Shown piece after piece: positions 793 through 56,300 of a DNA stretch of 64,000 bases; within the stretch, counting starts at the first letter, position 1; every line of letters begins with the position of its first letter. The position numbers and the translations under genes were made by a program. Under the pieces are notes generated by a model. The model saw only the letters and a list, made by a program, of their open reading frames with translations, searched no databases and was not told the origin of the DNA. The stretch lies in NCBI RefSeq assembly GCF_036365525.1, contig NW_027141336.1, positions 1-64,000 on the forward strand, written 5' to 3'. This stretch comes from Heterodontus francisci. Lineage: Eukaryota.

Positions 793-821
793 GTGAGTGA
801 GTGGATGGGGGTGGGGGGAGG

Positions 822-3010: not shown

Positions 3011-3014
3011 TACA

Positions 3015-3240
3015 ATAAAAACAGACAATGTTGGAAATACTCAGCAGGTCAGGTAGCATCTGTACAGAGAGCAATAATGTTAACCTTTCAGATCAGTGAC
3101 CTCCATTCTGACAAAGTGGTATTGACCTGAAACATTAACTCTGTTGCTCACGTCATAGATGCTGCCTGACCTGCTGAGTATTTCTAGAATGTTATGTTTT
3201 TATTTCAGATTTCCAGCATCTGCAGTGTTTTATTTTGTTG
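3015..3240. mobile_element. Palindromic Penelope-related non-autonomous element with degenerate hammerhead motifs
   Basis: Inverted arms gaaatactcagcaggtcaggtagcatct / agatgctgcctgacctgctgagtatttc; same family as 5180, 31133 and 36430. Confidence 0.7.
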
Positions 3241-5179: not shown

Positions 5180-5284
5180 TTGTCAGTTCCAAAGACGGGT
5201 CACTGATCCGAAACATTAACTCTGCTTCTCTTTTCACAGATGCTGCCAGACCTACTGAGTGGTTCCAGCATTTCTTGTTTTTAT
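5180..5284 (+). mobile_element. ~105-bp hammerhead-headed mini-element with 14-bp TSD
   Basis: Flanked by atctattgaactat at 5166-5179 and 5285-5298. Body: cagtt-ccaaaga-c-gggtc-act-gatcc-gaaac-att-aactctg... Confidence 0.75.
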
Positions 5285-9799: not shown

Positions 9800-10430
9800 G
9801 TGAGGGGGCTGAGGAACAGGAAGTGAGAGGACCGAGGGCCCATATGGGGAGCTGGGACTGAGGGACTCTTACACGGAGTGAGGGGACTGGGGGTCCCGTA
9901 CATGGAGTGAGGGGACTGGGGGCCTGTACAGGGAGTGAGGTGACTGAGGGCCTGTACAGGGAGTGAGGGGACTGGGGGCCTGTACAGGGAGTGAGGTGAC
10001 TGAGGGCCCATATCGGGAGTCAGGGGACTGAGGTCCCGTACAGGGAGTGAGGTGACTGAGGGCCTATATGGGGAGTCAGGGGACTGAGGGACCCTTACAT
10101 GGAGTGAGGTGACTGAGGTCCCGTACAGGGAGTGAGAGGACTGAGGTCCCGTACAGGGAGTGAGGGGACTGAGATCCCGTACAGGGAGTGAGGTGACTGA
10201 GGTCCCGTACAGGGTGTGAGGTGACTGAGGGCCCATATAGGGAGTCAGGGGACTGAGGTCCCCTACAGGGAGTGAGGGGACTGAGATCCCGTACAGGGGG
10301 TGAGGGGACTGAGGTCCCGTACAGGGTGTGAGGTGACTGAGGGCCCATATGGGGAGTCAGGGGACTGAGGTCCCCTACAGGGAGTGAGGGGACTGGGGGG
10401 CCTGTACAGGGGATGAAGGGACTGGGCTGA
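9800..10430 (+). repeat. G-rich minisatellite, 28-bp unit (agggagtgaggggactgaggtcccgtac)
   Basis: About 21 tandem copies downstream of the TM exon. Confidence 0.92.
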
Positions 10431-13135: not shown

Positions 13136-13903
13136 AGGGAAGGGATCGACAGGCCGTGACCAATCACAGATCACTGAGCACAGGGAGGGATCGACAGGCC
13201 AGTGACCAATCACAGATCACTGAGCACAGGGAGGGATCGACAGGCCGTGACCAATCATAGATCACTGAGCACAGGGAGGGATCAACAGGCCGTGACCAAT
13301 CACAGATCACTGAGCACAGGGAGGGATCGACAGGCCGTGACCAATCACAGATCACTGAGCACAGGGAGGGATCGACAGGCCGGTGACCAATCACAGATCA
13401 CTGAGCACAGGGAGGGATCGACAGGCAGGTGACCAATCACAGATCACTGAGCACAGGGAGGGATCGACAGGCTGGTGACGAATCACTGAGCACAGGGAGG
13501 GATCGACAGGCCGGTGACCGGTCACAGATCACTGAACACAGGGAGGGATCGGTAGGCAGGCGACCAATCACAGATCACTGAGCACAGGGAGGGATCGACA
13601 GGCAGGCGACCAATCACAGATCACTGAGCACAGGGAGGGATCGACAGGCCACTGACCAATCACAGATCACTGAGCACAGGGAGGGATCGACAGGCCGTAA
13701 CTAATCACAGATCACTGAACACAGGGAGGGATCGGTAGGCAGGCGACCAATCACAGATCACTGAGCACAGGGAGGGATCGACAGGCCACTGACCAATCAC
13801 AAATCACTGAGCATAGGGAGGGATCGACAGGCCACTGACCAATCACAGATCACTGAGCACAGGGAGGGATCGACAGGCCACTGACCAATCACAGATCACT
13901 GAC
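13136..13903 (+). repeat. 45/46-bp minisatellite (cagggagggatcgacaggccgtgaccaatcacagatcactgagca)
   Basis: About 17 highly similar tandem copies with no unique spacers. Confidence 0.95.
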
Positions 13904-24951: not shown

Positions 24952-25155
24952 TGTTCTATTGCAGAAAACCAACTGATGAAGGATGATATGGGACCCAAAC
25001 TTTACTCAGTCTTTACAGTGTGAAACATTACAAGCATATACCTCCTAACTTGACCACACAGTTTCAGTAAGTGTCACTTTATATGTGCTAAAATAAAACT
25101 CCAATTAATGCCCTTCACCTGCATATAAATAAACACAATTGATATACAATTAACA
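24952..25155 (-). repeat. 3' LTR of the Copia element
   Basis: Direct repeat of 34348-34558; ends tgtt...aaca. Confidence 0.85.
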
Positions 25156-25175
25156 GATTCCCTTCTTTCTTTTTA
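25156..25175 (-). promoter_or_regulatory. Polypurine tract
   Basis: The minus strand reads aaaaagaaagaagggaatc immediately before the 3' LTR. Confidence 0.8.
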
Positions 25176-26002
25176 AATAAATCTTAAGAGTTAATATGCA
25201 CAAATAACATTTCAAAAGAAAATCAGAAACAATTTCCATATTCAGTACAGAGCGTTATATTGCCAGATGCTCCTCCTCGAGGACATGGAGAGTCAAAGAG
25301 AGAGAGAGAGAGATACAGCACCGAAACAGGCCCTTCGGCCCAAAGACCCCTAACAAGTTCTTTGTACAAGCATTTCTTTTTGTAAAACAATTCAGATTGT
25401 TGGTGACTTGCAGCTACCCATTTAATTTTAGAGATTTCATTTCTCTCCAACATTTGTTTTAAGCCAGTAAAGTCAATCCATATCCTTTTCTCACTCACAT
25501 GTTTCATAGAGTGTACATTATCCCAAAAGGAACGATTATCTACATGGCATTCAATGGGTAGACTATCTCCCAGTATGTCCATTGTATAGAATCCTACTTA
25601 AAATGTTTGTCAAATAGAATCCCACTGCCTCACAAAAGCCAGTGTTTCTGCACTAAAGTACTTTTAATAGGCCTGCTTTATTTTCTTAGCCTCCCTAACT
25701 AAAGGACAACATTTCCCATTTTCACCCATTAGAAATAACATGAAACCAGCTGCACTCTAATACCTATCAGGAAGATTAGCAGGTGAAGCCTCACTAAAAA
25801 TAACTATTGCATGTTCTTTGGGTCACCTAAGTTGGGAACTTAAGTACACATTTCTCCAGATTTATTTTTTCAACATTTTATTTGCCCTTCAAACCTTTTT
25901 GACTTTATGGTGTTTCATCATAGAACTTAACACCAACATATCAAAACTAGAATCTGGTCTAGTCTGAGTGCACAACCAGTTCAAGTGACCGATCAAGCTT
26001 TG

Positions 26003-27508
26003 CATGGATGATGTTGCCGTCTTCTGCTCAGATCCGCTGTCAGTTCGCACACTGATGAGCATCTGTGACCACTTTGAACTGGCCTCTAGAGCCAAAGTAA
26101 ATTGTGGCAAGAAAGAGGCCAAGTTCTTTGGGAATTGTGCCAATCGATCCTTTGTCTCCTTCACTGTCAGGTCAGACTGTCTGAAGGTGCTGGGGATATG
26201 GCTCGGAGGGACTGGGGCTGGGGACAAAAACCGGAAGGAGTGAGTAGCCATGGGGAAACAGAAACTGGTCATGTGGGAGTGGCACTCCCTCTATATTGTG
26301 GCTAAGAACCTGGTCATCAGGTGTGAGGCGCTCTCAGTGTTGCTGTACATGGCACAGGACGGCCCATATCCACTTCTGCGTCATGGCGGTCACCAGAGCT
26401 TTCTTCTACTTTACCTGGAGATTGAAAATGGACCACGTCCGCAGGGACATGATGTTCAAACCTCTAGATAAAGGGGGGGAGGGGAAACGTACCCAACATC
26501 ACCCCATCACCCTCATCCTGATGGCCACCTTTGTCTGTGGCTGCATCAAGCTGTGCGTAGACCTCGGGTATGCAGACACAAGCTGTCACTATGTGCTGTT
26601 GATCTGTCTGTCCTCAGTATTGTGAAGGATGGGTCTGGCTACGTTACCGTGGAACGCTCCATTCAGTTGGACTGTCCAGTACCACCTCTCCCTTGTGGAA
26701 ATGTTTGTACTGAAAAACATCTTTGACCAGAAGTCCATCAGGCATTGGTCCGCACAGAACGTCCTCAAGGCCCTGCGGGAAAAGGAGATGGTGGATCCTG
26801 TCGGATGGTTCCCCGAGCAGACTGTCAGAGTCATTTGGCAGAATGCCTCATTGCCAGAACATTCAAACAAGCACCAAGACATAGCTTGGCTGGCGGTGAC
26901 AAGGGCCCTCCCCATCAGATCCTTCCTGCATAGCCAGAGTCTCACCGCCTCTGCACACTGCCCTCGAGGTGGCTGTGGTGGGGGAGAGACTGTCACCCAC
27001 CTCCTTCTGGAATGTGCATTTGCAAGGCAGGTCTGCAAAGAGATGCAGTGGATTTTGTCGAGGTTCATCCCGAGCAGCTCCATAATGCAGGACTCTGTGC
27101 TCTATAGGCTGTTACCAGGGACGCACACTGAGATAATCATCAACCAGATGAAAGACTCACTTTGATCTGCCCAAAACATGCTGGTCTTCCAGTGCAAAGA
27201 GTTGTCCACAACCAAGTGTTGCAGACTGGCACATTCCAAGGTATAGAACTACATGTTGAGGGATGCATTAAAGCTTGGGGCAGCAAAGGCTCAATGGGGA
27301 AAGACCACTATGTAAGGTCCTACTGTCAAAGTGTAACAAGGGTGGAACCCATGTAAAACCCCTCGGGCTGTATGGCAAGAGTTGTGAGGCACCTCCTGGA
27401 CCGCATTGAAAGAAACTGAACTTTATTGCACTTGATGAAATATACAATTTGAATTTTGCAGTATACTTTTAAAAATTTTATAAATAAAGCATATCTTTGG
27501 GAAAAAAA
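26003..27508 (+). mobile_element. Tx1/L1-clade LINE, 5'-truncated, nested in the Copia RT region
   Basis: MDDVAVF (YMDD-like) motif; C-terminal CPRGGCGGGETVTHLLLEC zinc knuckle; AATAAA and A-tail; imperfect TSD atc(a)agctttg. Confidence 0.85.
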
Positions 27509-28019
27509 TCAGCTTTGAAATTGTTCTGTCTCTTCTTCAGATATAACATCATCTTTCTCTGATGACCAATTAACCAGGATGGGAGTAACACCTCTCTATT
27601 AGGATTGTGATTAAAGTTACTTCAGATCTACTTTGCTTCATATCTAAACCAATATATTTAAAAGTCCCACTGGTCTGACTCCCAATTTTAAATTCTAATC
27701 TAATCTGAGAAAGAACACATTTCTCAAATTCTCCAATACCACCCCATAAGAAATCACTAACACGTATCATGAAGATTCCTGAAAGTGTTCCTTTAGGATA
27801 CAAATAAAACATTGCGGATCTACTTTTAGTTGAACAGAAGCTATTTTCAGCAAAACAGATCTCACTGAAAGATACCACACCCTGGAAGCATCATTCAGGC
27901 CATTGATGCATTTGTTTAGTTTCCATAGTTTTCCTTCTGTATCTGCTGCCTCTAGTCAGTTTCAGAAACATTTCACGCTGAAAAGTTGGCAGCCACTAAC
28001 ACTTGATGGTCATGAGGGT

Positions 28020-30770
28020 TTCTTTTTTTTTATTCATTCATGGGATGTGGGCGACGCTGGCCAGGCCAGCATTTATTGCCCATCCCTAATTGCCCTTGAG
28101 AAGGTGGTGATGAGCTGCCTTCTTCAACCGCTGCAGTCCATGTGGGGTAGGTACACCCACTGAAAGGAAGCGAGTTCCAGGATTTTGGCCCAGCGATAGT
28201 GAAGGAACGGCGATATAGTTCCAAGTCAGGATGGTGTGTGACTTGGACGCGAACTTGCAGGTGGTGATGTTCCTATGTATGTGCTGCCCTTGTCCTTCTA
28301 GGTGGTAGAGGTCGCGGGTTTGGAAGGTGCTGTCCAAGGAGCCTTGGTGCATTGCTGCAGTGCATCTTCTAGAATGTACACACTGCTGCCACTGTGCGTC
28401 GGTGGTGGAGGGAGTGAATGTTTGTAGATGGGGTGCCAATCAAGCGGGCTGCTTTGTCCTGGATGGTGTCGAGCTTCTTCAGTGTTGTTGGAGCTGCACC
28501 CATCCAGACAAGTGGAGAGTATTCCATCATACTCCTGACTTGTGCCTTGTAGATGGTGGACAGGCTTTGGGGAGTCAGGAGGAGAGTTACTCGCGAATGT
28601 TACTTGCCACTTATCAGCCCAAGCCTGGATATTGTCCAGGTCTTGCTGCATTTCTACACAGACTGCTTCAGTATCTGAGGAGTCACAAATGGTGCTGAAC
28701 ATTGTGTAATCATCAGCGAACATCCCCACTTCTGACCTTATGATTGAAGGAAGATCATTGATGAAGCAGCTAAAGATGGTTGGGCCTAGGAGACTACCCT
28801 GAGGAACTCCAGCAGTGATGTCCTGGAGCTCAGATGATTGACCTCCAACAACCACAACCATCTTCCTTTGCCCTAGGTATGACTCCAACCAGCGGAGGGT
28901 TTTCCCCCTGATTCCCATTGACCTCAGTTTTGCTCGGGCTCCTTGATGCCATACTCGGTCAAATGCTGCCTTGATGTCAAGGGCAGTCACTCTCACCTCA
29001 CCTTTTGAGTTCAGCTCTTTTGTCCATGTTTGAACCAAGGCTCTAATGAGGTCAGGAGCTGAGTAGCCCTGGCGCAACCCAAATTGAGCGTCACTGGACA
29101 GGTTATTGCTTAGCAAGTGCCGCTTGATGGCACTGTTGATGACCCCTTCCATCACATTACTGATGATAGAGAGTAGGCTGATGGGGCAGTAATTGGCCGG
29201 GTTGGATTTGTCCTGTTTTTTGTGTACAGGACATACCTGGGCAATTTTCCACATTGCAGGGTAGATGCCAGTGTTGTAGCTGTACTGGAACAGCTTGGCT
29301 AGGGCGCGCGGCAAGTTCTGGAGCACAGATCTTCAGTACTATTGCCGGAATTTTATCAGGGCCGTAGCTTTTGCAGTATCCAGTGTCTTCAGTCTTTTCT
29401 TGATATCACGCGGAGTGAATCGAATTGGCTGAAATCAGGCATCTGTGATGCTGGGGACTTCAGGAAGAGGCCGAGATGGATCATCGGCACTTCTGGCTGA
29501 AGATTGTTGCAAATGCTTCAGCCTTATCTTTCGCACTGATGTGCTGGGCTCCCCCAACATTGAGGATGGGGATATTTAAGAGCCACCTCCTCCAGTTAGT
29601 TGTTTAATTGTCCACCACCATTCACAGCTGGATGTAGCAGGACTGCAGAGCTTAGATCTGATACGTTGGTTATGGGATCACTTAGCTCTGTCTATCGCAT
29701 GCTGCTTACACAGTTTGGCACGCAGAGAGTCCTGTGTTGTAGCTTCACCAGGTTGACACCTCATTTTGAGGTATGCCTGGTGCTGCTCCTGGCATGCCCT
29801 CCTGCACTCTTCATTGAACCAGGGTTGGTCTTCTGGCTTGATGGTCATGGTAGAGTGGGGGATATGCCGGGCCATGAGGTTACAGATTGTGGTTGAGTAC
29901 AATTCTGCTGCTGCTGATGGCCCACAGCGCCTCATGGATGCCCAGTTTTGCATTGCTAGATCTGTTCAAAATCTATCCCATTTAGCACGGTGATAGTGCC
30001 ACACAACACGATGGACAGTATCCTCAATGTGAAGGCGGGACCTCACCTCCACAAGGACTGTGAGGTGGTCACTCCTACCAATACAGTCATGGACAGAAGC
30101 ATTTGCAGCAGGCAGATTGGTGAGGACGAGGTCAAGTAGGTTTTTCCCTTGTGTTGGTTCCCCCACCACCTGCCACAGACCCAGTCTAGCAGCTATGTCC
30201 TTTAGGACTCGGCCAGCTCGGTCAGTAGTGGTGCTACCGAGCCACGCTTGGTGATGAACATTGAAGTCCCCCACCCAGAGTACATTCTGTGCCCTTGCCA
30301 CCCTCAGTGATTCCTCCAAGTGGTGTTCAACATGGTGTAGTACTGAGTCATCAGCTGAGGGAGGGCGGTAGGTGGTAATCAGTAGGAGGTTACCTTGCCC
30401 ATGTTTGACCTGATGCCATGAGACTTCATGGGGTCCGGATTCAATGTTGAGGACTCCCAGGGCAACTCCCTCCCAACTGTATACCACTGTGCCACCACCT
30501 CTGATGGGTCTGTCCTGAAGTGGGACAGGACATACCCAGGGATAGTGATTGCAGTGTCTGGGACATTATCTGTAAGGTATGATTCCGTGAGTATGACTAT
30601 GCCAGGCAGTTGCTTGACTAGTTTGTGGGACAGCTCTCCCAACTTTGGCACATGCCCCCAGATGTTAGTAAGGAGGACTTTGCAGGGTCGACAGGGTTGG
30701 GTTTGCTGTTGTCATTTCTGGTGCCTAGGTCGATGCCGGGTGGTCCGTCTGGTTTCATTCCTTTTTCTGC
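28020..30770 (-). mobile_element. CR1-superfamily (Zenon-like) LINE nested in the Copia element
   Basis: ORF 28298..29326 has ALDIKAAFDRVWH, AGVPQGSLLGP, FADD; APE ORFs at 29966-30651. Confidence 0.9.
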
Positions 30771-31132
30771 TTCTGGTTCTGCTCAAGACTGTTCTGTAGC
30801 CCTCATTTCATTGTGTAATCTATTCAAGATATAGCTTGTACTTGCACGTTGATGTTTTTTGGGACTATTGCTGTGAGATCTCTATCTCACACTATAGCAT
30901 GCTCCTTCTCTGGTATATGACTGTTTTCTGACTAGAGTCACCTTTGAACCCATTTAGAACTTGCACTGCGCTTTCTTACTCTCCATTCATTCACCCAATT
31001 CTGCCAGTCCATGGACCTCACTTCTTGACCACCATCCTGAACATTCAACCAATATTTAAACTTGGCCGTAGCTTTTCCTGCATGCCCCCCAATTGTCACA
31101 TCCCTTCATTTTCCAGACCCCTCTGGAATATA

Positions 31133-31227
31133 AACATGAGAAACACTGGAAATACTCAGCAGGTCTGGCAGCATCTGTGGAGAGAGAAGTAGAGTTAACG
31201 TTTCAGGTCAGTGACCTTTCTTCAGAA
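31133..31227 (-). mobile_element. ~95-bp hammerhead-headed mini-element with 13-bp TSD
   Basis: TSD cctctggaatata at 31120-31132 and 31228-31240. Confidence 0.8.
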
Positions 31228-31230
31228 CCT
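31191..31230 (-). ncRNA. Minimal type I hammerhead ribozyme motif
   Basis: Minus strand: GTT-CTGAAGA-A-AGGTC-act-GACCT-GAAAC-GTT-AAC. Confidence 0.65.
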
Positions 31231-31949
31231 CTGGAATATACATCACTCATGGACCCACTGTGGACAATTGGTCTTTGGATGTAATAGCTCTGTCCTGTGT
31301 TTCATGATCACTCATGTTACCAGTATCCGCCCTTGATCACTGTATTTTGTTCCTCAGGACCTTCTCACAAAACACATGAGCATTTGAGGTACAAGGTGCC
31401 TTGTTTCCTTCTATCAGCTGCTCAGATTCTGAGATTTTGTAATCAACTCTGACTAATCATGAAGAATGAAGCTTAACAGTTTGATTGAAATGTTTGATAA
31501 GTAGTGTCTTCCCATCATGATCTATTACATTACCAGGGCATTTCCATTTCCTATGACCCTCTCTTTCATAATACACCAAACCTCCTGAATTAAATTCTGT
31601 TTAAAATGGCCTTACTTGATGCCTCACAGCTCTTCAAATTTTCTCAGAGAACTCAGTCTTGATGAAAGCCCGTCTCCCTGCATGTAAAGAAGTCAAGTGT
31701 GCAGCAAAAATGGAACTAACTGTAGTACCTTCTCGTGCTGGAGGACTATCGCACAGCACAGAAAGCAATTTTAGATTTCGCCCATAGACCAATTGAGAGG
31801 GACTATATCCCCCAACCATCTGACACGGATTCTTTGCATGAACTGCCCATGCCAGAGCAGTTGCCAACTTGCAGTTTGCTTGATCATCTGGATTTTAAGC
31901 AGCATTTCATTGATTGCCGTGTGATTCCTTTCACAGAGTCCATTGCTGA

Positions 31950-32265
31950 AAGGATATACGAACATACAAATTAGGAGCAGGAGTAGGCCACCTGGCTCCT
32001 TGAGCCTATTCCGCCATTCAATAAGATCATGGCTGATCTGATTGTAAGCTCAACTCCACATTCCCACCTTCCCCCAATAACCTTTCCCCCCTTGCTTATC
32101 AAGAATCTATCTACCTCTGCCTTAAAAATATTAAAAGACTCTGCTTCCATCGCTTTTTGAGGAGGAGAATTCCAAAGACTCACAACCCTCTGAGAGAAAA
32201 AAAAATTCTCATCTTTGTCTTAAATGGGTGACCCCTTATTTTAAAACAGTGACCCCTAGTTCTAG
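31950..32265 (-). mobile_element. CR1 3' end fragment nested in the Copia integrase
   Basis: ORF 31971..32183 reads LWNSPPQKAMEAESFNIFKAEVDRFL. Confidence 0.8.
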
Positions 32266-33077
32266 ACTAGGACTTTCAGCAGTCGAATTCATGACCATAA
32301 TGTTTATCTTTTCACACATGTGTCTGAACTCATCATTGGCAAATTCCCCTCCATTATCAGTCAGTGCCCCAAGTCCAGTCCCTATCCATTTCTCCATGAT
32401 TGTATCTATAATCACCCTTTTGTCCTTGCTATGAATTATTATTAAAAGACGGAATCAAATTGTCTGGTCAATAAAATGTAGAATAAAAATATTTCTGTCT
32501 TTGTCCCACACCTTTAGATCCAGGACAACTCCCTTGTTAAAGTCACTTGTCAATGGAAGGCTGGCAATAGGCCGCGGCAGTGTCCTTCGATACTTTTTAC
32601 AGATTTCACAATTCTCACTAATCTCTTCTATTAACCTCATAGAACCTTCATCAACCACACCAGCATCTTTTAACAGGATTTTTAACCATTGACAAGTGGA
32701 GTGTGTAAATTGTCTATGCAACTTTAAGACAATTTGTTTGTTTTCCTCTCTGATTCTTATCACCTGATGCCATTAATTCTTGTCTTACACTCTGATGTGA
32801 AACATTAGGTTGTGTTAGGGGGATACAATAATGTCCTGATTGGATAAACTCCAGATCCACTGCCTTGTTATGTTCCGTGTCAAGTTTCATTTGTGCTTTA
32901 TTCAGCAGCAGAGGTATGTCACTGGAGATTGTATCAGGACTGATAAAGTGGCTTACTCCAGCCGGAAACTCCATCGATCAAACATGATGGACACGGAGCA
33001 AACAATCTATTTAGGTGGAGTGTCTTCTTTTGGTGCACCTTTGCTGATGGCTGTGAAGGCCAATCCTTGAGAGGCAG

Positions 33078-33232
33078 AGCCTACATGTGACGCACAGGAA
33101 TGTGATTGACTCTTAAAATGCCCTCTGAAATGGCCTCGAAAGCCATTCAGTTCAAGGGCAATTAGGGACTGGCAACAAATGCTGGCCTTGCCAGTGATGC
33201 CCACATCCCATGAATGAATAAAAAAAAAAAAT
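33078..33232 (+). mobile_element. SINE fragment joining the 5' region and 3' tail of the Zenon-like LINE
   Basis: Matches 21320-21400, then jumps to the LINE tail (aagggcaattaggg...cccatgaatgaataaaa). An antisense body fragment lies at ~33390-33555. Confidence 0.65.
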
Positions 33233-34329
33233 GCCCTTTCGAGGACCCTGCCTCTTTGCTGTGGGCAGTTCATCACATAACAACACTTTGAGTCACACCT
33301 GAAACACTTATTAACTGTTCCTTGGCATTCCTGGGATTCACCTATTATTGCTATTCCAATTCTGTCTTCTGCTGTAGTAGCCAAATCTCATGTGGGTCAC
33401 ATGTAGGCCAGACCAGGTAAGGATGACAGATTTCATTCTGTAGAGGACATATGTGAACCAGATGGGTTTTTTGCAATAATCAATGATAGTTTCATAGCAC
33501 CATTACTGAGACTAGCTCTCAATTCCAGATTTTTTATTCATTAATTGAATGTAAATAGCTTTCATACTCATTCCACCTGTCTGTCATTCTTCCTTTGTCT
33601 GCCTGCATCCAATATCTGGACCATTTCAAATCTGGCAATCATTGAGTTTTCTATTCTTTGTGTCACTGCAAAATATTCCATCTGTTCGACAAAGACTGCA
33701 GCAAATGACTGTTTCCTCTGGATTTTTTTCAAGGCAGCAGACATCTAATCCAACAGGATTCTCTCTGAGAACCAAAAACCATTTCGAACCAGGAGCCTAT
33801 CCATATGCAACCTTAGTATAATCCAGCAATTTAAATGCTAGCACTGAACCAGGGATCTCTAAATTGAATTTCCTCAATCTTTATGCAGTCTGTTAGAATC
33901 CATGGTATATTCTTCCATTGACTAACTATCTGTCTTCTGAAATCTATCAAATTCTGACCATGCCTCATAGGCATTTAATAGATGATATTTCTTGTAGATT
34001 TCATCCAAGAACTCTCATGGAAGATCCAAACCTTCATCAGTATTCAACTGATGAGCACTTCGCTCACAAAATACTTTTCTTCTGATTTTACTTCTTGTAA
34101 GAATTGACAATGTCAAGGCCATACCTTGTTTCCTGTTTGGTAGGGGCATAACCCATGTCCACCAATCCACTTCGTGCTTCCACTGGTTACATGGCTCACT
34201 CTGAGAACATTGGAGGGTAATCAAACCCAGATAATTTACACTCACTTTCTGTCATTTCTCACAATGGCTATTAGGATTGTAGTCTTCTGTCTCATTTTTT
34301 TTCTTGCTTTTCTACCTTCACCTTTAGGC

Positions 34330-34347
34330 AACTATCCTCTGCTACCA
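34330..34347 (-). promoter_or_regulatory. Primer-binding site complementary to initiator tRNA-Met
   Basis: Plus strand aactatcctctgctacca versus the vertebrate tRNA-iMet 3' end AACCATCCTCTGCTACCA (17/18), directly adjacent to the 5' LTR. Confidence 0.9.
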
Positions 34348-34558
34348 TATTATATTCCAGGAAGCCAGTTGGTGAAGGAAAGCACTGGAGCCAATCTTTA
34401 GTCAATCTCACATTTATTTACAGAGTCAAACATTACATGGACACAGCTCCTAACTCAACCACAGTTTCAGTAAGTGTCTCTTTACATGTGCTCAAGTGAA
34501 ATCCTAATTAATGCCCTCCACCTGCATATAATTAAACACAATTCATATGCAATTAACA
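34348..34558 (-). repeat. 5' LTR of the Copia element
   Basis: Direct repeat of 24952-25155; abuts the PBS. Confidence 0.85.
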
Positions 34559-34599
34559 CATAGACAGTAATGAGATAACTAGATAAAACAAAGTTAAAG

Positions 34600-36015
34600 G
34601 ATGTAAAGATAAGCCCAGCAACTACAGGCCAATCAGTTTAACATTGGTGGTGGGGAAACTTATAGAAACAATAATTCAGGACAAAATTAATAGTCACATG
34701 GACAGATGCGGGTTAATTAAGAAAAGCCAGCATGGATCTGTCTCGGGAAAATCATGTTTAACTAACTTGCTGGAGTTTTGGAAGGGGCAACTGAGATGGT
34801 TGATGAGTGCAATGCTGTTGATGTGGTGTACATGGACATCCAAAAGACATTTGATACAGTGACACACAACCGACTTGTGAGCTCAGTCATAGCTCATGGA
34901 ATAAAAGGGACAGTAGCAACATGGATACGAAATTGGCTGAGTGACAGGAAACAGAGAGTAGTGACTAATGGATGTTTTACGGGCTGGAGGAAGGTTTGTA
35001 GTGGAGTTCCCCAGGGGTCAGTGTTAGGGCCTTTGCTCTTCCTAATCTATATTAATGACTTTGACCTTGGTGTACAGGGCACAATTTCAAAATTTGCGGA
35101 TGATACGAAACTTGGAAACATTGTGAACTATGAGGGGGATAGTGTAGAACTTCAAAAGCACATAGACAAGCTGGTGGAATGGGTGGACAAGTGGCAGAAG
35201 AAGTTCAATGCAGAGAAATATGAAATGATTCATTTTGGTAGGAAGAACATGGAGACAATATAAAATAAAGGGTACAATTCTAAAGGGTGGTGCAGGAACA
35301 GAGGGACCTGTGAGTATATGTGCATAAGTCATTGAAGATGGCAGGATAGGTTGAGAGTGCGGTCAATAATGTATGCAGTATCCTAGGTTTTATTAATAGG
35401 TGCATAGAGTACAAGAGCAAGGAGGTTATGTTGAACTTCTATAAGACACTAGTTTGGCCTCAGCTGGAGTATTGCATCCAGTTCTGGGTGCCACATTTAA
35501 GGAAAGACTTGAAGGGATTGGAAAGAATCCAGAAAAGATTCACAAGAATGGTTCCAAGGATAAGAAACTTCATTTACGAGGATAGACTGGAGAAATTTGG
35601 ACTGTTTTCTTTGGAGAAGAGAAAGCTGAGAGGAGTTTTGATAGAGGTATTCAAAATCATGAGGGATCTGGACAGAATAGAGAAGGAGAAATTCATGAAA
35701 GGATCGAGAACGGGAGGGCACAGATTTAAGATAATTGACATAGGAAGCAATGGTGACATGAGGAAAAACCTTTTCACACAGCGAGTGGTTGGGATCTGGA
35801 ATGCACTGCCTGATAGCGTGGTGGAGGCAGGTTCAAACAAGCCATTCAATAGGGAATTAGTCAGTTACCTGAAAATGAAGAATGCACAGGGTTATGGAGA
35901 GAAGGCGGGGGTGGGGGTGGGAACTGCACTAAGCCAATTACTCACTCCGAGAGCTGGTGCAGACATGATGGGCCGAATGGCCTCCTTCTGTGCTGTAACG
36001 ATTCTGTGATTCTGT
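34600..36015 (+). mobile_element. CR1 LINE, 5'-truncated RT and 3' end
   Basis: SGVPQGSVLGPLLFLIYIND...KFADDTK; (gattctgt) tail. Confidence 0.9.
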
Positions 36016-36429
36016 GCGGATCTGCTAACATTCTAATGATGCCAACTGAACTGCTTTTAATGTCATTAAATATTGTTTCTTAATGGTCTACACACGCAAT
36101 CAGTTCATATCCAATACAAACAGCTGTTGGCTAAATCAGTATTAACAGCAGTCACACCATTTCAGACGTTTAACAGACTCAAAGCAGGTTACTTTTTTTT
36201 TTAAAACATCCTTTAAACAGACGAGTTCCTTTCCCTCTAATTCCATTACCTAGTACTCACTGGAAAGTGACATTCTTGGGATTATTTTACAGAACAGTTC
36301 AAACCCAGCCTAGTTTCAGTGTTATTTAACAATGCAAGGGATTTATATATATGGTGGAAGATTTTAGTTCGGCCAACTGACAGAATTTCCATGATTATAA
36401 GAATTAAACCAACAAGAGATTAATATCAA

Positions 36430-36610
36430 GATAAAATGGTGGAAATGCTCAGCAGGCAGGTAGCATTATGTGTTCTGATGAAAGGTCACTGACCTGAAAC
36501 GTTAACTCTGCTTCTCTCTCCACAGATGCTGCCAGACCTGCTGAGAATTTCCAGCAATTTTTGTTTTCATTTCAGATTTTCAGCATCTGCAGTATTTTGC
36601 TTTTATTTTA
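36430..36610 (+). mobile_element. Penelope-related non-autonomous element with intact hammerhead core
   Basis: Short inverted arm (ggaaatgctcagcagg) followed by a forward copy of the same family as 3015, 5180 and 31133. Confidence 0.7.
36472..36506 (+). ncRNA. Minimal type I hammerhead ribozyme motif
   Basis: GTT-CTGATGA-A-AGGTC-act-GACCT-GAAAC-GTT-AAC. Confidence 0.68.
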
Positions 36611-37089
36611 GCATTATAATGGCACTTGCTAACTGCATGAGTCAAAATTAAATGCACCCGAGAATCACAGCAGAAGCTGGCCTCCCACCTTCACTCCCAT
36701 TGAAAGTAAATGTCAGGTTCTAACACAAACCACTGTTAATTCATAAAAAGCTGGCGGCTTGCCTTTTTATTGTTCATTCCCTTTCTCCCCCTTCTGTTTT
36801 TTCTCTCTCAGTCCCACGCCAGAGATTATGCAGCAAACCCTCTGGAAAGGCAATAGAGACATCCTGCGGTCCAGTGAGCCCCAGTCTGAGGACCACTACT
36901 TTATACAGTGAGATTCGGGCTGTGTCTGCCTGTCCCACTCTGGGCTCATGTGGAATCATTTCCTTTTACTGATCCTGTTCATTCTCAATTTGTTCTACAC
37001 AAAACAGCACAGATTCCTTTCCTACCCTGTACAAGGTCACATGGAATAAACCCATCCCATTCCATGTCCCTGCACTTTACAATATATAC

Positions 37090-38978
37090 ACATTTATCAA
37101 CCTCCTCTATTTGTGTCTCACTCTGTATCACTGTATTCTGTCTCACCTTTATCAATCACCCTCTGTTTGTGCGTCTCACTCTGTATCACTGTATTCAGTC
37201 TTACCTTTATCAATCACCCTCTGTTTGTGCGTCTCACTCTGTATCGCTGTATTCATTCTCACCTTTATCAATCTCCTCTGTTTGTGTCTCTCTGTATCAC
37301 TGTATTCAGTCTCACCTTTATCAATCTCCTCTGTTTGTGCGTCTCACTCTGTATCACTGTATTCATTCTCACCTTTATCAATCACTCTCTGTTTGTGTCT
37401 CTCTGTATCACTGTATTCATTCTCACCTTTATCAATCTCCTCTGTTTGTGTCTCACACTGTATCACTGTATTCAGTCTTACCTTTATCAATCACCCTCTG
37501 TTTGTGCGTCTCACTCTGTATCACTGTATTCATTCTCACCTTTATCAATCTCCTCTGTTTGTGTCTCACACTGTATCACTGTATTCAGTCTTACCTTTAT
37601 CAATCACCCTCTGTTTGTGCGTCTCACTCTGTATCACTGTATTCAGTCTCACCTTTATCAATCACTCTCTGTTTGTGTCTCACACTGTATCACTGTATTC
37701 ACTCTCACCTTTATCAATCACTCTCTGTTTGTGTCTCTCTGTATCACTGTATTCATTCTCACCTTTATCAATCACTCTCTGTTTGTGTCTCTCTGTATCA
37801 CTGTATTCAGTCTCACCTTTATCAATCACCCTCTGTTTGTGTCACTCTGTATCACTGTATTCATTCTCACCTTTATCAATCTCCTCTGTTTGTGTCTCTC
37901 TGTATCACTGTATTCAGTCTCACCTTTATCAATCACTCTCTGTTTGTGTCTCTCTGTATCACTGTATTCAGTCTCACCTTTATCAATCACCCTCTATTTG
38001 TGTCTCTCTGTATCACTGCATTCACTCTCACCTTTATCAATCAGTCTCTGTTTGTGTCTCTCTGTATCACTGTATTCAGTCTCACCTTTATCAATCACTC
38101 TCTGTTTGTGTCTCTCTGTATCACTGTATTCAGTCTCACCTTTATCAATCACTCTCTGTTTGTGACTCTCTGTATCACTGTATTCAGTCTCACCTTTATC
38201 AATCACCCTCTGTTTGTGTCTCTCTGTATCACTGCATTCACTCTCACCTTTATCAATCACCCTCTGTTTGTGTCTCTCTGTATCACTGTGTTCAAGTCGC
38301 AGCTTTATCAATCACCCTCTGTTTGTGTCTCTCTGTATCACTGTGTTCAAGTCTCACCTTTATCAATCACTCTCTGTTTGTGTCTCTCTGTATCACTGTA
38401 TTCAAGTCTCACCTTTATCAATCACTCTCTGTTTGTGTCTCTGTATCACTGTATTCACTCTCACCTTTATCAATCACTCTCTATTTGTGTCTCTCTGTAT
38501 CACTGTATTCAGTCTCACCTTTATCAATCACTCTCTGTTTGTGTCTCTCTGTATCACTGTATTCAGTCTCACCTTTATCAATCACTCTCTGTTTGTGTCT
38601 CTCTGTATCACTGTATTCAGTCTCACCTTTATCAATCACTCTCTGTTTGTGTCTCTCTATCACTGTATTCACTCTCACCTTTATCAATCACTCTCTGTTT
38701 GTGTCTCTCTATCACTGTATTCAAGTCTCACCTTTATCAATCACTCTCTGTTTGTGTCTCTCTGTATCACTGTATTCAAGTCTCACCTTTATCAATCACT
38801 CTCTGTTTGTGTCTCTCTGTATCACTGTATTCAAGTCTCACCTTTATCAATCACCCTCGGTTTGTGTCTCTCTGTATCACTGTATTCAGTCTCACCTTTA
38901 TCAATCACTCTCTGTTTGTGTCTCTCTGTATCACTGTATTCAGTCTCACCTTTGTCAATCACCCTTGGTTTGTGTCTT
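37090..38978 (+). repeat. 54-bp satellite (tctcacctttatcaatcactctctgtttgtgtctctctgtatcactgtattcag)
   Basis: About 35 tandem copies with small indel variants. Confidence 0.97.
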
Positions 38979-38979
38979 T

Positions 38980-39950
38980 CGGGTTCTTTTACCACAAAAA
39001 TATGCTGTTCACAAAATTTGTAAGTACAACACATATAGGTCAAAGTTGACATTGCATAAAATGCAATACAGACCAATTTCTTTCAATACAGTATATGAGG
39101 TGATTCACAACACTTGCCATTACAGGTACATTTGCATTTGATATCATTCTCTGGTGCATATAGCCCAAGGGGTTTTCCACGGGTTCCAGCCTCTCGGCTT
39201 ACCATAGTGAGAAGGCCTTAGATAGTGGCATTTTCCCATTGGGCCTTTGTGGCAGCTGCCCCAATACATCCCTCAATACATAGGCCCGGACCTCGGACTG
39301 TGCCAGTCTGCAACACTCGGTTATTGACAGCTCTTTGCACTGGAAGACCAGTAGGTTTTGTGCAGACCAAAGAGCATCTTTCAGCAAGTTGATGGTCCTC
39401 CAGCAGCAGCTGATGTTTATCTCAGTATGTGTCCTGGGGAACAGCCATAGAGCACTGAGTCCTGTATTACAGAGCTGCTCAGGATCAACTTTGTGGAAAA
39501 CCACTGCATCTCTTTCCAGAGCTGCTTTGTAAAGGCACATTCCAGAAAGAGGTGGGTGATGGTCTCTTCCCCACCGCAGTCACCTCAAGGGCAGTGTGCG
39601 GAGGCAGGCAGGCAGGCTCTGGCCATGCAGAACTGACAGGGAGGGCCCTTCTCACCACCAGGATTGCTATATCTATGTGCTTGTTTGGAAGTTCTGGCAA
39701 TGACACCATCTGGAAATGCATTTGACAGTCTGCACAGAGAACCAACCGACAGGGTCCACCATCTCCTTTTCCCGCAGGGCCTCAAGGATGTTATGTGTGG
39801 AATACTGCCTGATGGACTAGTGATCAAAGGTGTTTTTCTGTACAAACGTTGCCACGAGAGACAGATAGTACGGCACGGTCCAACTGAATGGAGCTTGAAG
39901 CAACAACATGGCCAGACACATTCTCAGCAACGCCAGGGACAGATAGATCA
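38980..39950 (-). mobile_element. Tx1-clade LINE 3' fragment
   Basis: ORF 39199..39540 reads CCWRTINLLKDALWSAQNLLVFQCKELS; homologous to the 26003-27508 copy. Confidence 0.8.
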
Positions 39951-40254
39951 GTGTGTCTCGGTATCACTGTTCTGAGGCTCACTTTATCAATCTCCTCTAC
40001 TGCTGACTCTGTGTATCACTCATTGTACTCAGAAATTTTCTGTGTAAATTTTATCTGTAACAGGCGAACTAGAAACTCCTGAGCACTTGAGTATTGGCCA
40101 TGGGAAATTTACATTTTAAAATTAACTGATCTTAAGCAAAGTTGTCAGTAGCTTGTTCATTACAATTCAAGGCAAATTCTGGATAGTATCTGGCTATGCA
40201 CACAGGCACCTTCGAGAGAATATTGTCCTTCTTGAAGTCCCATGGTCCCATTCA

Positions 40255-40955
40255 CCCTCTCCTCTCACAGGTCTCATTCTCGTTCTCTCCTCTCACTGCT
40301 CCCATTCTCTCTCTCTCCTCTCACTGCTCCCATTCTCTCTCTCTCTCCTCTCACTGCCCCCATTCTCTCTCTCTCTCCTCTCACAGCTCCCAATCCCTAT
40401 CTCTCCTCTCACTGCTCCCATTCTCTCTCTCTCTCCTCTCACTGCCCCCATTCTCTCTCTCTCCTCTCACTGCCCCCATTCTCTCTCTCTCCTCTCACTG
40501 CCCCCATTCTCTCTCTCTCTCCTCTCACAGCTCCCAATCCCTATCTCTCCTCTCACTGCTCCCATTCTCTCTCTCTCTCCTCTCACTGCCCCCATTCTCT
40601 CTCTCTCCTCTCACTGCCCCCATTCTCTCTCTCTCCTCTCACCTCTCACTGCCCCCATTCTCTCTCTCTCTCCTCTCACTGCCCCCATTCTCTCTCTCTC
40701 TCCTCTCACTGCCCCCATTCTCTCTCTCTCTCCTCTCACAGCTCCCAATCCCTGTCTCTCCTCTCACTGCTCCCATTCTCTCTCTCTCTCCTCTCACTGC
40801 CCCCATTCTCTCTCTCTCCTCTCACTGCCCCCATTCTCTCTCTCTCCTCTCACTCTCCCATTCTCTCTCTCTCCGCTCACTGCTCCCATTCTCTCTCTCT
40901 CTCCTCTCACTCTCCCATTCTCTCTCTCTCCGCTCACTACTCCCATTCATTCTCC
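40255..40955 (+). repeat. Pyrimidine-rich minisatellite (~28-32 bp; ctcctctcactgcccccattctctctct)
   Basis: About 23 tandem copies with a variable (CT)n core. Confidence 0.95.
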
Positions 40956-40959
40956 CGCA

Positions 40960-42092
40960 GCAAGTATGGCATCAAGGAGCCCGAGCAAAACTTCAGTTAA
41001 TGGGAATCAGGGGGAAAACTCTCCACTGGTTGAAATCGTACCTAGCGGAAAGGAAGATGGTTGTGGTCATTGGAGATCAATCATCTGAGCTCCAGGACAT
41101 CACTGCAGGAGTTCCTGAGGGTAGTGTCCTCGGCCTAATCATCTTCAGCTTCTTCTTCAATGACCTTTCTTCAAAAATAAGGTCTAGAAGTGGGGATGTT
41201 CGCTGATGATTGCACAATGTTCAGCACCATTCGCAACTCCTCAAATACTGAAGCAGTCTGTTTAGAAATGCAGCAAGACCTGGACAATATCCAGGCTTGG
41301 GCTGATAAGTGGCAAGCAACATTCGTGCCACACAAGTGCCAGGCAATGACCATCTCCAACAAGAGTGAGTCTAACCATCTCCTCTCGACTTTCGATGGCA
41401 TTACGATTGCTGAATCCCCCATTATCAACATCCTAGGGGTTACCCTTGACCAGAAACTGAACTGGAGTAGCCATATAAATACCGTGGCTACAAGAGCAGG
41501 TCAGAGGCTAGGAATCCCGCAGCAAGTAGCTCACCTCCTGACTCCCCAAAGCCTGTCCACCATGTACAAGGCATAAGTCAGAAGTGTGATGGAACACTCT
41601 CCACTTGCCTGGTTGGGTGCAGCTCCAACAACATTCAAGAAGCTCGACACCATCCAGGACAAAGCAGCCAGCTTGATTGGCACCCCGTCTACAAACATTC
41701 ACTCCCTCCACTACTGACACACAGTAGCAGCAGTGTGTACATCTACAAGATGCACTGCAGCAATGCACCAAGGCCACTCAGGCAGCACCTTCCAAATCCA
41801 CGACCCCTACAACCTAGAAGATAAGGGCAGCAGATGTGTGGGAACACCACAACCTTCAAGTTCCCCTCCAAGTCACACACCATCCTGACTTGGAACTATA
41901 TTGCCATTCCTTCACTGCCGCTGGGTCAAAATCCTGGAACTCCCTTCCTAACAGCACTGTGGGTGTACCTACCACACTAGGACTGTGGCTTTTCAAGAAG
42001 GTGGTTCACCACCACCTTCTCTTGGGCAATTAGGGCTGGGCAATAAATGCTGGCCTGGCCGGTGATGCCCACAGCCCATGAAATAAATAAGA
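40960..42092 (+). mobile_element. Zenon-like LINE, 5'-truncated
   Basis: VWHQGARAKL...AGVPEGSVLG...FADD; same tail as the other copies. Confidence 0.88.
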
Positions 42093-55539: not shown

Positions 55540-56300
55540 TTCTCCAATTACAGATTCACTCTCTCAAGTGCTCACAACTCCTCTAATCACAGATTTCCTC
55601 TCTCCCTCGCTACTCATCCAATAACAGATTCCCTCCCACCCACACTTGCTGCTCCTCCAATCACAGATTCCCTCTCCCCATGCTCGCTGATCCTCCAATC
55701 ACAGATTCCCTTGCGTCTGCGCTCGCTGCACTTCGAATCACAGATGCCCTCTCTTCTGTGTTCACTGCTCTTCCAATCATAGATTCCATCTCGCCTGTGC
55801 TGGTTGCTCTTCCAATCATAGATTCCATCTCTCCTGTGCTAGTTGCTCTTTCAATCACAGATTCCATCTCTCCTGTGCTCGATTCTCCTCCAATCACAGA
55901 TTCCATCTCTCCTGTGCTGGTTGTTCTTTAAATCACATATTCCATCTCTCCTGTGCTCTATTCTCCTCCAATCACAGATTCCATCTCTCCTGTGCTCGAT
56001 TCTCCTCCAATCACAGATTCCATCTCTCCTGTGCTCGATTCTCCTCCAATCACAGATTCCATCTCTCCTGTGCTCGATTCTCCTCCAATCACAGATTCCA
56101 TCTCTCCTCTGCTCGATTCTCCTCCAATCACAGATTCCATCTCTCCTGTGCTAGTTGCTCTTTCAATCACAGATTCCATCTCTCCTGTGCTGGTTGCTCT
56201 TTCAATCACAGATTCCCTCTCGCCTGTGCTCGATTCTCCTCAAATTACAGATTCCATCTCTGCAACAATCACTGCTCCTCCAATCACAGATTCCCTCTCT
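55540..56300 (+). repeat. 39-bp minisatellite (tcctccaatcacagattccatctctcctgtgctcgattc)
   Basis: About 19 tandem copies. Confidence 0.93.

What the first reader, a model, noticed from the sequence alone, without database searches (positions are those of the whole stretch)
31120..31240. Minimal ~95-bp retro-mobile element consisting of an intact hammerhead ribozyme plus a short tail
Seen: a perfect 13-bp TSD (cctctggaatata) brackets an insert whose minus strand starts TT-CTGAAGA-A-AGGTC-act-GACCT-GAAAC-GTT-AAC... and ends in a T-rich tail. The independent insert at 5180 has almost the same boundaries. Established: Penelope-like elements and retrozymes carry minimal type I hammerheads with a palindromic, dimer-dependent helix III (here AACGTT), and an extra A after CUGANGA occurs in natural hammerheads. 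Inference: a SINE-sized, promoter-less, ribozyme-headed non-autonomous family, probably mobilised by Penelope machinery. Four insertions in 64 kb suggest a very high genomic copy number. This is the best candidate in the window for a little-described system.
Basis: partly seen in the sequence, partly recalled or inferred. Interest (0 to 1): 0.8.

Follow-up and report, generated by a model that had tools for sequence, protein, structure and literature searches.

The report
Truncated Penelope-type retrocopy with hammerhead motif
A 95-base insertion flanked by a perfect 13-base duplication is one of many short shark retrotransposon end-pieces that carry a minimal hammerhead ribozyme motif, a kind of element already described in other animals.

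Summary
A perfect 13-bp duplication (31120-31132 and 31228-31240) brackets a 95-bp insert. Its minus strand begins TT-CUGAAGA-A-AGGUC-ACU-GACCU-GAAA-CGUU. The window holds six pieces of this family at four loci. A minimal-hammerhead descriptor hits only copies A and C (0.015 hits expected by chance).

"Intact ribozyme" overstates it. The catalytic core is intact, but only 2 nt of the helix I 5' strand lie inside the insert, pair 10.1-11.1 is A-U, and Rfam gives no hammerhead match.

The family shows the published marks of Penelope-like element (PLE) insertion:
- target duplications of 9-14 bp that contain ATT;
- two alternative 3' ends about 40 nt apart (the "tail");
- head-to-head inverted partners at 2 of 4 loci.

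Contig depth suggests roughly 10^4-10^5 copies, in three related species. Translated copies sit in annotated proteins of Scyliorhinus and Heterodontus.

Copy B, and the contigs clipped at copy C's start, run on into a shared upstream sequence. So these are most likely severely 5'-truncated PLE ends with a truncation hot spot at the ribozyme, not a self-contained SINE.

No autonomous partner was found. The scan holds 31 notes with the words hammerhead and Penelope for this genome. Verdict: new member of a known kind, modest interest.

The parts
31120..31132 (.). Target-site duplication, copy next to the element's 3' end (CCTCTGGAATATA on the + strand)
31133..31227 (-). Copy A: the 95-bp insert of the finding, short form, element on the minus strand
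   Evidence: 88.8% to copy C over 107 nt; nhmmer E 8.4e-30
31228..31240 (.). Target-site duplication, copy next to the element's 5' end
31197..31225 (-). Minimal hammerhead core of copy A. C3-A9 = 31225-31219 (CUGAAGA). Extra A = 31218. Helix II = 31217-31213 / 31209-31205 (AGGUC/GACCU) with loop ACU. G12-A14 = 31204-31202. A15.1 C15.2 G16.2 U16.1 U17 = 31201-31197. The predicted cut lies between 31197 and 31196 (inferred from standard hammerhead numbering, not shown).
31133..31179 (-). Most conserved family segment (CACAGATGCTGCCAGACCTGCTGAG...) and the short-form 3' end. In long-form copies this segment is the 5' arm of a 3' hairpin.
5180..5284 (+). Copy B: 105-bp short-form insert between the 14-bp duplications 5166-5179 and 5285-5298. 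The core has decayed (CCAAAGA, ACAU). Helix II is GGGUC/GAUCC. It starts 7 nt further upstream than A.
36470..36608 (+). Copy C: 139-bp long form with a canonical CUGAUGA core and a tail of about 40 nt. Flanked by the 9-bp repeat TAGCATTAT (36461-36469 and 36609-36617).
36426..36467 (-). Copy C0: older inverted fragment truncated at about +50, abutting the 5' end of copy C
   Evidence: E 2.4e-07
3106..3236 (+). Copy D2: old long-form copy with tail, right arm of a head-to-head pair
3014..3102 (-). Copy D1: old short-form copy, left arm of the head-to-head pair. Its 5' end lies inside the hammerhead.

Best explanation
Copy A is a dead-on-arrival, severely 5'-truncated retrocopy of the terminal module of a shark Penelope-like element (PLE) family. 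It was inserted by target-primed reverse transcription into an AT-containing site inside a LINE-like sequence, which created the 13-bp duplication.

The module has three parts: a minimal type I hammerhead, a 22-nt pyrimidine-rich spacer, and the highly conserved segment CAGAUGCUGCC.GACCUGCUGAG. In long copies that segment pairs with a tail of about 40 nt to form a hairpin.

Reverse transcription would start at either of two internal sites. One lies in the apical loop of the hairpin and gives short copies such as A and B. The other lies about 11 nt 3' of the hairpin base and gives long copies such as C and D2. Synthesis then runs towards the hammerhead and most often stops just 5' of it.

Priming on both DNA strands, or snap-back of the cDNA, would give the head-to-head pairs. 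The hammerhead is carried along uncleaved. In a solo copy like A it cannot form its own helix I and has no partner for the dimeric helix III, so it is probably inert.

Shown: the insertion, the duplication, the motif, the two 3' end types, the inverted pairs, high abundance, and presence in several shark species.

Inferred: the PLE enzyme, the start sites, the stop, and the lack of activity.
For: - Insertion and duplications.
- Six family pieces, 70-89% alike pairwise.
- Motif far above chance, with the extra nucleotide after A9 and the palindromic ACGU that PMC4209133 lists for PLE min-HHRs.
- Two 3' end classes. A, B and D1 end near ...TTGTTTTT(AT). C and D2 run about 38-41 nt further.
- This matches the optional 30-40 bp tail lying between two internal RT start sites: PMC11167929, PMC8557442.
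- The long form folds into a hairpin (z -4.09 for C, -2.17 for D2), and the short form ends in its loop.
- Inverted 5'-truncated partner at 2 of 4 loci. The same head-to-head joint appears in other genomic contigs (31219->36473: 2 contigs in X1, 1 in X10). This is as described for PLEs and fits cleavage and extension of both strands.
- All 3 clear duplications contain ATT, the preferred cleavage motif reported.
- A longer parent exists. 1066 X1 contigs and 87 X17 contigs are clipped at 36472, and their two clipped consensus strings are mutually similar. B's extra 7 nt match 6 of 7 letters of the X1 consensus.
- Summed contig depth over the copies is 1.5-3.1 million, against 52-72 for single-copy contigs in X1. 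It is similarly high in organisms B and D.
- Translated copies occur in proteins annotated from Scyliorhinus torazame, S. canicula and Heterodontus francisci.
Against: - No reverse transcriptase or GIY-YIG element with this terminus was seen. The five RVT_1 ORFs in the window were not shown to be PLE: three were compared with solved structures, of which two matched L1 ORF2p best and one matched R2/group II RTs only weakly but carries a FADD motif with an endonuclease-like ORF upstream; one lies beside an Exo_endo_phos_2 ORF; one (40196-41206) had only a sub-threshold match and was not followed up.
- Four of six 5' ends lie within 8 nt of each other. That is not what plain random truncation predicts.
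- The agreement of the clipped upstream letters is low (0.43-0.48, against 0.31-0.38 at other repeat ends). Most copies may therefore truly end at the hammerhead, as a discrete unit would.
- No head-to-tail partial tandem (pLTR) occurs at any of the 4 loci.
- The conserved G10.1-C11.1 pair is A-U in A and C.
- A search for long proteins starting with the peptide that opens at the family's ATG found only short spurious ORFs (7 of 7 hits). So the parallel with the Anolis element, whose ORF starts at the ribozyme, is not supported.
Confidence: 0.65

Rival explanations
1. A true non-autonomous family. A discrete 100-140 nt unit with a defined 5' end at the hammerhead is transcribed from its own source copies or by read-through. 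It is copied in trans by Penelope reverse transcriptase because it holds the enzyme's recognition hairpin and start sites.
For: - The 5' ends cluster: 4 of 6 lie between -9 and -2 of C3.
- 1066 contigs are clipped at 36472 with low agreement of the clipped letters (0.43).
- Abundance is very high.
- Earlier scan notes list a 142-bp unit and a 204-bp spacer-less palindrome elsewhere in this genome (not checked by me).
- In vitro, 5'-truncated templates are still inserted by the Anolis element, and the full pLTR is not needed.
Against: - The ends are not identical between copies.
- B carries 7 nt of the shared upstream continuation.
- The unit has no promoter-like head: ARAGORN found no tRNA gene and Rfam gave no match.
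- No tandem or source array lies in the window.
- Copies are 70-89% alike, consistent with dead copies that decay.
Confidence: 0.22
2. A monomer of an animal non-LTR retrozyme. Tandem units are transcribed, cut by the hammerhead and circularised, and the circles are reverse transcribed. Copy A would be a solo offspring.
For: - The hammerhead is type I with a dimer-type helix III.
- The preprint 10.64898/2026.07.22.740005 reports retrozymes in the one chondrichthyan it sampled, and monomer 'offspring'.
- An earlier follow-up in this scan reported 245-bp units arranged head-to-tail and head-to-head (not checked here).
Against: - No head-to-tail repeat occurs at any of the 4 loci.
- Copies begin 33 nt upstream of the predicted cleavage site, not at it. 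The template was therefore uncut and not circularly permuted.
- There are no loop-loop contacts of canonical retrozyme hammerheads: the helix II loop is 3 nt and helix I is open.
- The units are shorter than the 170-400 nt reported.
Confidence: 0.06
3. A LINE-dependent SINE, or the 3' tail of a LINE, whose hammerhead-like motif is fortuitous.
For: - The window is rich in LINE reverse transcriptases.
- A 3' hairpin is a common LINE recognition signal (my own knowledge).
- Duplications of 9-14 bp also fit LINE insertion.
Against: - No other similarity to the family exists in the window, including the LINE copies.
- The motif is expected 0.015 times per window by chance yet shows all PLE-type peculiarities.
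- The optional tail and the head-to-head pairs are described as not seen in LINE insertion.
- There is no tRNA, 7SL or 5S head.
Confidence: 0.05

Closest known systems
Minimal hammerheads (min-HHR) of metazoan Penelope-like elements, dispersed as single motifs (Cervera & de la Pena 2014, PMC4209133; text read)
   Same: - CUGANGA/GAAA core in type I order.
- One nucleotide between A9 and 10.1.
- No loop 3, with palindromic 15.2-16.2.
- Short, poorly defined helix I.
- Thousands of dispersed single copies, and pairs on opposite strands.
- Found in fish, coelacanth and frog.
   Different: - Helix II is only 5 bp here, against 6-8 reported.
- 10.1-11.1 is A-U in the two intact copies.
- This shark family and its boundaries are not described in the text I read. 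The supplementary alignments were not visible.
Poseidon element of Anolis carolinensis (PAc): internal initiation of reverse transcription (Frangieh et al. 2024, PMC11167929; main text read)
   Same: - Two 3' end classes 30-40 nt apart, downstream of the hammerhead.
- ATT-containing targets.
- Both strands can be primed.
- Uncut hammerhead in the copies.
- Start site in a stem-loop.
   Different: - In PAc the ORF begins at helix II and the start sites lie 111-118 nt into the ORF. Here the frame through the ribozyme is closed.
- The ATG 22 nt after the cut site could not be linked to any long protein.
- The hairpin here is U-rich, not AC-rich.
Animal non-LTR retrozymes (Cervera & de la Pena 2020, PMC7229834, passages; Li, Clavereau & Pollet 2026 preprint, abstract, results part 1 and passages)
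   Same: - Small non-coding hammerhead-bearing retroelements.
- They co-occur with PLEs and derive from PLE terminal repeats.
- Duplications are longer than 4 bp.
   Different: - Retrozymes are head-to-tail tandem units of 170-400 nt with canonical hammerheads and abundant circular RNAs.
- Here the copies are solo or head-to-head, 95-139 nt long, with a minimal hammerhead.
- No RNA evidence was obtained.
Sm-alpha, the SINE-like hammerhead element of Schistosoma (recalled from memory; Ferbeyre et al. 1998 is only cited)
   Same: A short, very abundant, ribozyme-bearing retroposon in a genome that also has PLEs.
   Different: Sm-alpha carries a canonical, active hammerhead and is said to have a Pol III type promoter (recalled). 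No such head exists here.

Membership tests
Metazoan PLE minimal hammerhead (min-HHR) | Catalytic boxes CUGANGA and GAAA in type I order | tested here: met
   Copies A (CUGAAGA) and C (CUGAUGA) meet it. B, D1 and D2 have decayed.
Metazoan PLE minimal hammerhead (min-HHR) | One unpaired nucleotide between A9 and 10.1 | tested here: met
   An extra A is present in A and C. The descriptor hits needed extra=1. The feature is named in PMC4209133.
Metazoan PLE minimal hammerhead (min-HHR) | Conserved G10.1-C11.1 pair | tested here: not met
   The pair is A-U in A, C and D1, and G-C only in B. C11.1-G12 is a CpG, so a C-to-U change followed by a compensating G-to-A change is plausible (inference).
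Metazoan PLE minimal hammerhead (min-HHR) | Palindromic 15.2-16.2 without loop 3 (dimeric helix III) | tested here: met
   A and C have ACGU within AACGUU. It is lost in B and D2 (ACAU, CpG decay) and in D1 (AGGU).
Metazoan PLE minimal hammerhead (min-HHR) | Helix I of 4-5 bp | tested here: inconclusive
   The insert supplies only UU. With the flanking duplication there are 4 contiguous pairs including one G-U in A, and 3 in C. The family's upstream continuation ends ...CCAG, which gives AGUU/AACU.
Metazoan PLE minimal hammerhead (min-HHR) | Lies in the terminal repeat of an element encoding RT plus GIY-YIG endonuclease | not testable with these tools
   No PLE-type RT was identified among the window's RVT_1 ORFs (40196-41206 not followed up).
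Metazoan PLE minimal hammerhead (min-HHR) | Self-cleavage, as a dimer | not testable with these tools
   Cofolding favours a trans helix II duplex, which says nothing about catalysis.
Penelope-like element insertion | Target-site duplication at AT-rich or ATT sites | tested here: met
   The duplications are 13, 14 and 9 bp, 62-79% A+T, and each contains ATT. None was found for the old D pair.
Penelope-like element insertion | Optional 30-40 bp tail at the 3' end | tested here: met
   C and D2 extend about 38-41 nt beyond the end shared by A, B and D1.
Penelope-like element insertion | Inverted 5'-truncated copy adjacent to the 5' end | tested here: met
   D1/D2 and C0/C, that is 2 of 4 loci. 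Head-to-head joints also appear in other contigs. C0/C may instead be a nested insertion, given the 9-bp repeat.
Penelope-like element insertion | Partial head-to-tail tandem (pseudo-LTR) | tested here: not met
   0 of 4 loci.
Non-LTR retrozyme | Head-to-tail tandem units with canonical loop-loop hammerheads that give circular RNAs | tested here: not met
   No tandem units. The hammerhead is minimal. Circular RNA is not testable, because the only possible RNA run was held as contigs and looked DNA-like.
SINE (Pol III retroposon) | tRNA-, 7SL- or 5S-derived head with an internal promoter | tested here: not met
   ARAGORN found 0 genes in the window. Rfam gave 0 matches at gathering thresholds.

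The most novel reading that the evidence does not exclude
The hammerhead may mark a programmed 5' end rather than serving as an RNA cutter. Most of the roughly 10^4-10^5 shark copies would then be complete products of a short template, or of a defined stop of reverse transcription, at the ribozyme. The sequence by which longer copies continue upstream reads like a branch point, a pyrimidine tract and CAG directly abutting helix I, as at the Drosophila virilis Penelope intron. The 100/140-nt cassette of ribozyme plus recognition hairpin would then act as a SINE-like parasite of Penelope enzymes, kept across shark orders.
Probability: 0.15. Interest if true: 0.55.

Novelty: new member of a known kind. 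Interest (0 to 1): 0.3.

Why it matters
It adds a very abundant cartilaginous-fish family to the known association of minimal hammerheads with Penelope-like elements.

At single-locus resolution it shows the genomic footprint predicted by the 2024 in vitro work: two internal start sites, an optional tail, ATT-containing targets and head-to-head products.

The strong clustering of 5' ends at the ribozyme is the only point that goes beyond the literature I read. If it is general, it would bear on what the hammerhead does for these elements, which remains open.

A practical point: translated copies of this repeat sit in annotated shark proteins.

Tried and rejected
- **Rfam.** There was no hammerhead match at gathering thresholds on the window, nor at E<=10 on the A or C locus. 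The weak snoRNA, miRNA and other rows there are chance-level. The min-HHR lacks helix III, so this does not argue against the motif.
- **Autonomous partner in the window.** Of 20 ORFs scanned against Pfam, five had RVT_1 matches (one of them, 40196-41206, below the curated cut-off and not followed up), one Exo_endo_phos_2 and one 7tm_1. There was no GIY-YIG. PDB sequence matches and motifs point to LINE types.
- **More copies from public collections.** The 21-mer gave 7 metagenome loci. All had 53-67% G+C and matched only about 30 nt, so they are chance bacterial matches and I dropped them. The viral scan gave 0. No paper holds either 21-mer.
- **blastn row 32730-32766** (E 0.056) and the 11 nhmmer rows with E 0.64-9.6 were dropped as chance.
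- **Empty site or orthologous empty locus.** No joint skipping 31133-31240 was among the 15 joints shown. 8048 joints were not shown, so this stays open.
- **Expression.** The only run labelled 'RNA?' of the same organism was held as contigs. Its ratio of family depth to flank depth was like that of DNA, so nothing can be said.
- **ORF-start idea.** An ATG 22 nt after the predicted cut opens MLPDLLSISS... in 5 of 6 copies. All 4 variable columns in the first 21 nt are third codon positions (chance about 0.012 by my arithmetic). But the profile search of 1.84 billion proteins gave 7 hits, all short ORFs or mis-joined gene models with unrelated flanks, and none was an RT. Not supported.
- **Duplication for the D pair.** None was found.
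- **Dimer folding** is uninformative for catalysis.
- **Literature limits.** Lunse et al. 2017 on dimeric PLE hammerheads is only recalled. One search listed papers that cite it, and I did not read it. The supplementary alignments of PMC4209133 and the tables of the 2026 preprint (species list, consensus sequences) could already contain this family. Repbase and Dfam could not be consulted.
Full report
**What is there.**
The + strand carries CCTCTGGAATATA at 31120-31132 and again at 31228-31240, with 95 bp between. Read on the minus strand, the insert begins TTCTGAAGAAAGGTCACTGACCTGAAACGTTAACTCTACTTCTCTCTCCACAGATGCTGCCAGACCTGCTGAG and ends TGTTTCTCATGTT. Outside tandem arrays, the window has only two perfect direct repeats of 13 bp or more at 60-250 bp spacing. 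These are this one and the 14-bp repeat around the related insert at 5180-5284.

**Family in the window.**
blastn with copy C and an nhmmer profile both find six pieces at four loci:
- A: 31133-31227, minus strand.
- B: 5180-5284, plus strand.
- C: 36470-36608, plus strand, with an inverted fragment C0 (about 36426-36467) abutting its 5' end.
- D1 (3014-3102, minus) and D2 (3106-3236, plus), a head-to-head pair.

One blastn row (E 0.056) and eleven nhmmer rows (E 0.64-9.6) were dropped as chance. Pairwise identity is 70-89%, so none of the copies is very young.

**The hammerhead.**
In standard numbering, copy A has:
- C3-A9 = CUGAAGA;
- one extra A;
- helix II AGGUC/GACCU with loop ACU;
- G12-A14;
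- then A15.1-C15.2-G16.2-U16.1-U17 with no loop 3.

ACGU is therefore a palindrome that can pair only between two molecules. The predicted cut is GUU|AAC, which is an inference.

A descriptor script finds exactly two such motifs in the window, in copies A and C. It expects 0.015 per window by chance, and 0 of 200 shuffles gave two or more.

The extra nucleotide, the missing loop 3, the palindromic 15.2-16.2 pair and a short helix I are the traits Cervera and de la Pena list for Penelope-element min-HHRs. Two things fall short of 'intact':
- Their conserved G10.1-C11.1 pair is A-U in A, C and D1, and G-C only in B.
- The insert has only two nucleotides of the helix I 5' strand. Any helix I in copy A borrows the flanking duplication.

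B, D1 and D2 have lost core positions and the CpG of the palindrome. Rfam models give no hammerhead match, as expected for a motif without helix III.

**Marks of the insertion mechanism.**
1. The three clear duplications are 13, 14 and 9 bp long, 62-79% A+T, and each contains ATT.
2. There are two 3' end classes. A, B and D1 end near ...TTGTTTTT(AT). C and D2 run about 38-41 nt further.
3. In the long form, the conserved segment and this extra tail form a hairpin (z -4.09 and -2.17). The short form ends in its apical loop.
4. Two of the four loci have an inverted, 5'-truncated partner at the 5' end. Contigs from elsewhere in the genome show the same head-to-head joint.

These are the features described for Penelope-like elements:
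- strong 5' truncation, an adjacent inverted 5'-truncated copy, a 30-40 bp tail, and the hammerhead in the pseudo-LTR (PMC8557442 passages);
- internal initiation at two adjacent sites that explains the tail, ATT-preferring cleavage, and cleavage and extension of both strands;
- insertion of uncut RNA with the hammerhead dispensable in vitro (PMC11167929 main text).

**Abundance and spread.**
Contigs of four public runs were laid on 30900-36800.
- In the DNA run of the same organism, summed depth over the bins holding A and C is 1.48 and 3.06 million.
- Depth is about 13,000 in A's repetitive flanks and 100-400 in C's unique flanks.
- Exact single-copy contigs have depth 52-72.

This suggests on the order of 10^4-10^5 copies at 85% likeness or more. 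The tool warns that this figure is not a copy number. Two other coded organisms show equally high depth.

The run guessed to be RNA was held as contigs and gave a DNA-like ratio, so expression is undecided.

A profile of the peptide encoded after the family's ATG found 7 proteins among 1.84 billion. Three carry source names from Scyliorhinus torazame, S. canicula and Heterodontus francisci. This shows independently of the scan's notes that the family is a shark repeat present in two shark orders.

**Discrete unit or truncated end?**
Relative to C3, the 5' ends are:
- A: -2.
- D2: -2 or -3.
- C: -3 to -5.
- B: -9.
- D1: about +8.
- C0: about +50.

This clustering is far tighter than random truncation of a kilobase-sized element would give.

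However, 1066 contigs of X1 and 87 of X17 are clipped at 36472. Their two clipped consensus strings are nearly the same and end ...TTTTGCCA or ...TTTTCCA. Copy B's extra TTGTCAG matches 6 of 7 letters of that continuation. So longer family members exist, and B is a truncation inside them.

The agreement of the clipped letters is 0.43-0.48, against 0.31-0.38 at other repeat ends in the same table. This suggests, roughly, that a minority of copies continue and most stop there. That is my inference from one table in which many rows were not shown.

I therefore read copy A as a truncated Penelope-type end at a truncation hot spot (0.65). A genuinely discrete, trans-mobilised mini-family is the main rival (0.22).

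**What I could not show.**
- I could not retrieve an RT/GIY-YIG element with this terminus. I identified no PLE-type RT among the window's RT ORFs. The public scans gave nothing usable.
- An earlier follow-up of this scan, on another piece of the genome, called the family a Neptune-type Penelope derivative. I could not check that.
- The idea that the parent ORF starts at the conserved ATG is not supported. The idea rested on a third-position variation pattern. The protein search found only short spurious ORFs.
- Ribozyme activity, transcripts and circles are untested.

**Novelty.**
- Dispersed single min-HHRs 'probably related to truncated PLEs', and pairs on opposite strands, were reported in 2014 for fish, coelacanth and frog.
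- The tail mechanism was reported in 2024.
- The derivation of small hammerhead retroelements from PLE termini was reported in a 2026 preprint that sampled one chondrichthyan.
- My searches found no paper that describes this shark family or holds its 21-mers. Supplements, Repbase and Dfam were out of reach.
- The scan holds 31 notes with the words hammerhead and Penelope for this genome.

Verdict: a new member of a known kind, of modest interest. The one feature worth a genome-wide look is the 5'-end hot spot at the ribozyme.

Noticed in passing
window 28298-30487 (minus), within 24952-34558: The sequence around copy A carries Exo_endo_phos_2 (29966-30487) and RVT_1 (28298-29326) ORFs on the minus strand, which is a LINE-type layout. 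A 102-nt direct repeat (25057-25158 and 34460-34561, 87% alike) does exist. The question is unresolved.
   Followed up: partly
Read laying loose ends before window 36472: The consensus of letters by which other genomic copies continue upstream of the hammerhead reads like a branch point (CTAAC), a pyrimidine tract and CAG directly abutting helix I (agreement only 0.43-0.48). PMC4209133 reports that the D. virilis Penelope intron ends at the 5' end of helix I.
   Followed up: no
window 36526-36608, 3159-3236, 5240-5284, 31133-31174 (minus), 3009-3059 (minus): An ATG 22 nt after the predicted cleavage site opens a frame (MLPDLLSISS...) kept in 5 of 6 copies. All 4 variable columns in the first 21 nt are third codon positions. 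No long protein with this start was found.
   Followed up: yes
proteins P0002, P0006, P0007 (public shark annotations): Translated copies of this repeat are embedded in annotated proteins. One is a Heterodontus francisci '1-phosphatidylinositol 3-phosphate 5-kinase-like' model that holds the peptide twice. These are probably annotation artefacts.
   Followed up: partly
window 59062-59997 (minus): An uninterrupted 311-aa ORF with a full-length 7tm_1 (rhodopsin-family receptor) match, E 3.3e-21.
   Followed up: no
window 423-1095, 9854-10283, 13141-13801, 37115-38833, 40257-40847, 55652-56221: Several tandem-repeat arrays. The array at 37115-38833 explains why three overlapping + strand ORFs are open across about 36908-39141.
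   Followed up: no
window 31885-32278, 33067-33460, 34446-36021: Other very high-copy repeats by summed contig depth (10^5-10^6) in all four runs, with sharp ends at 33226-33229 and 36013-36016.
   Followed up: no
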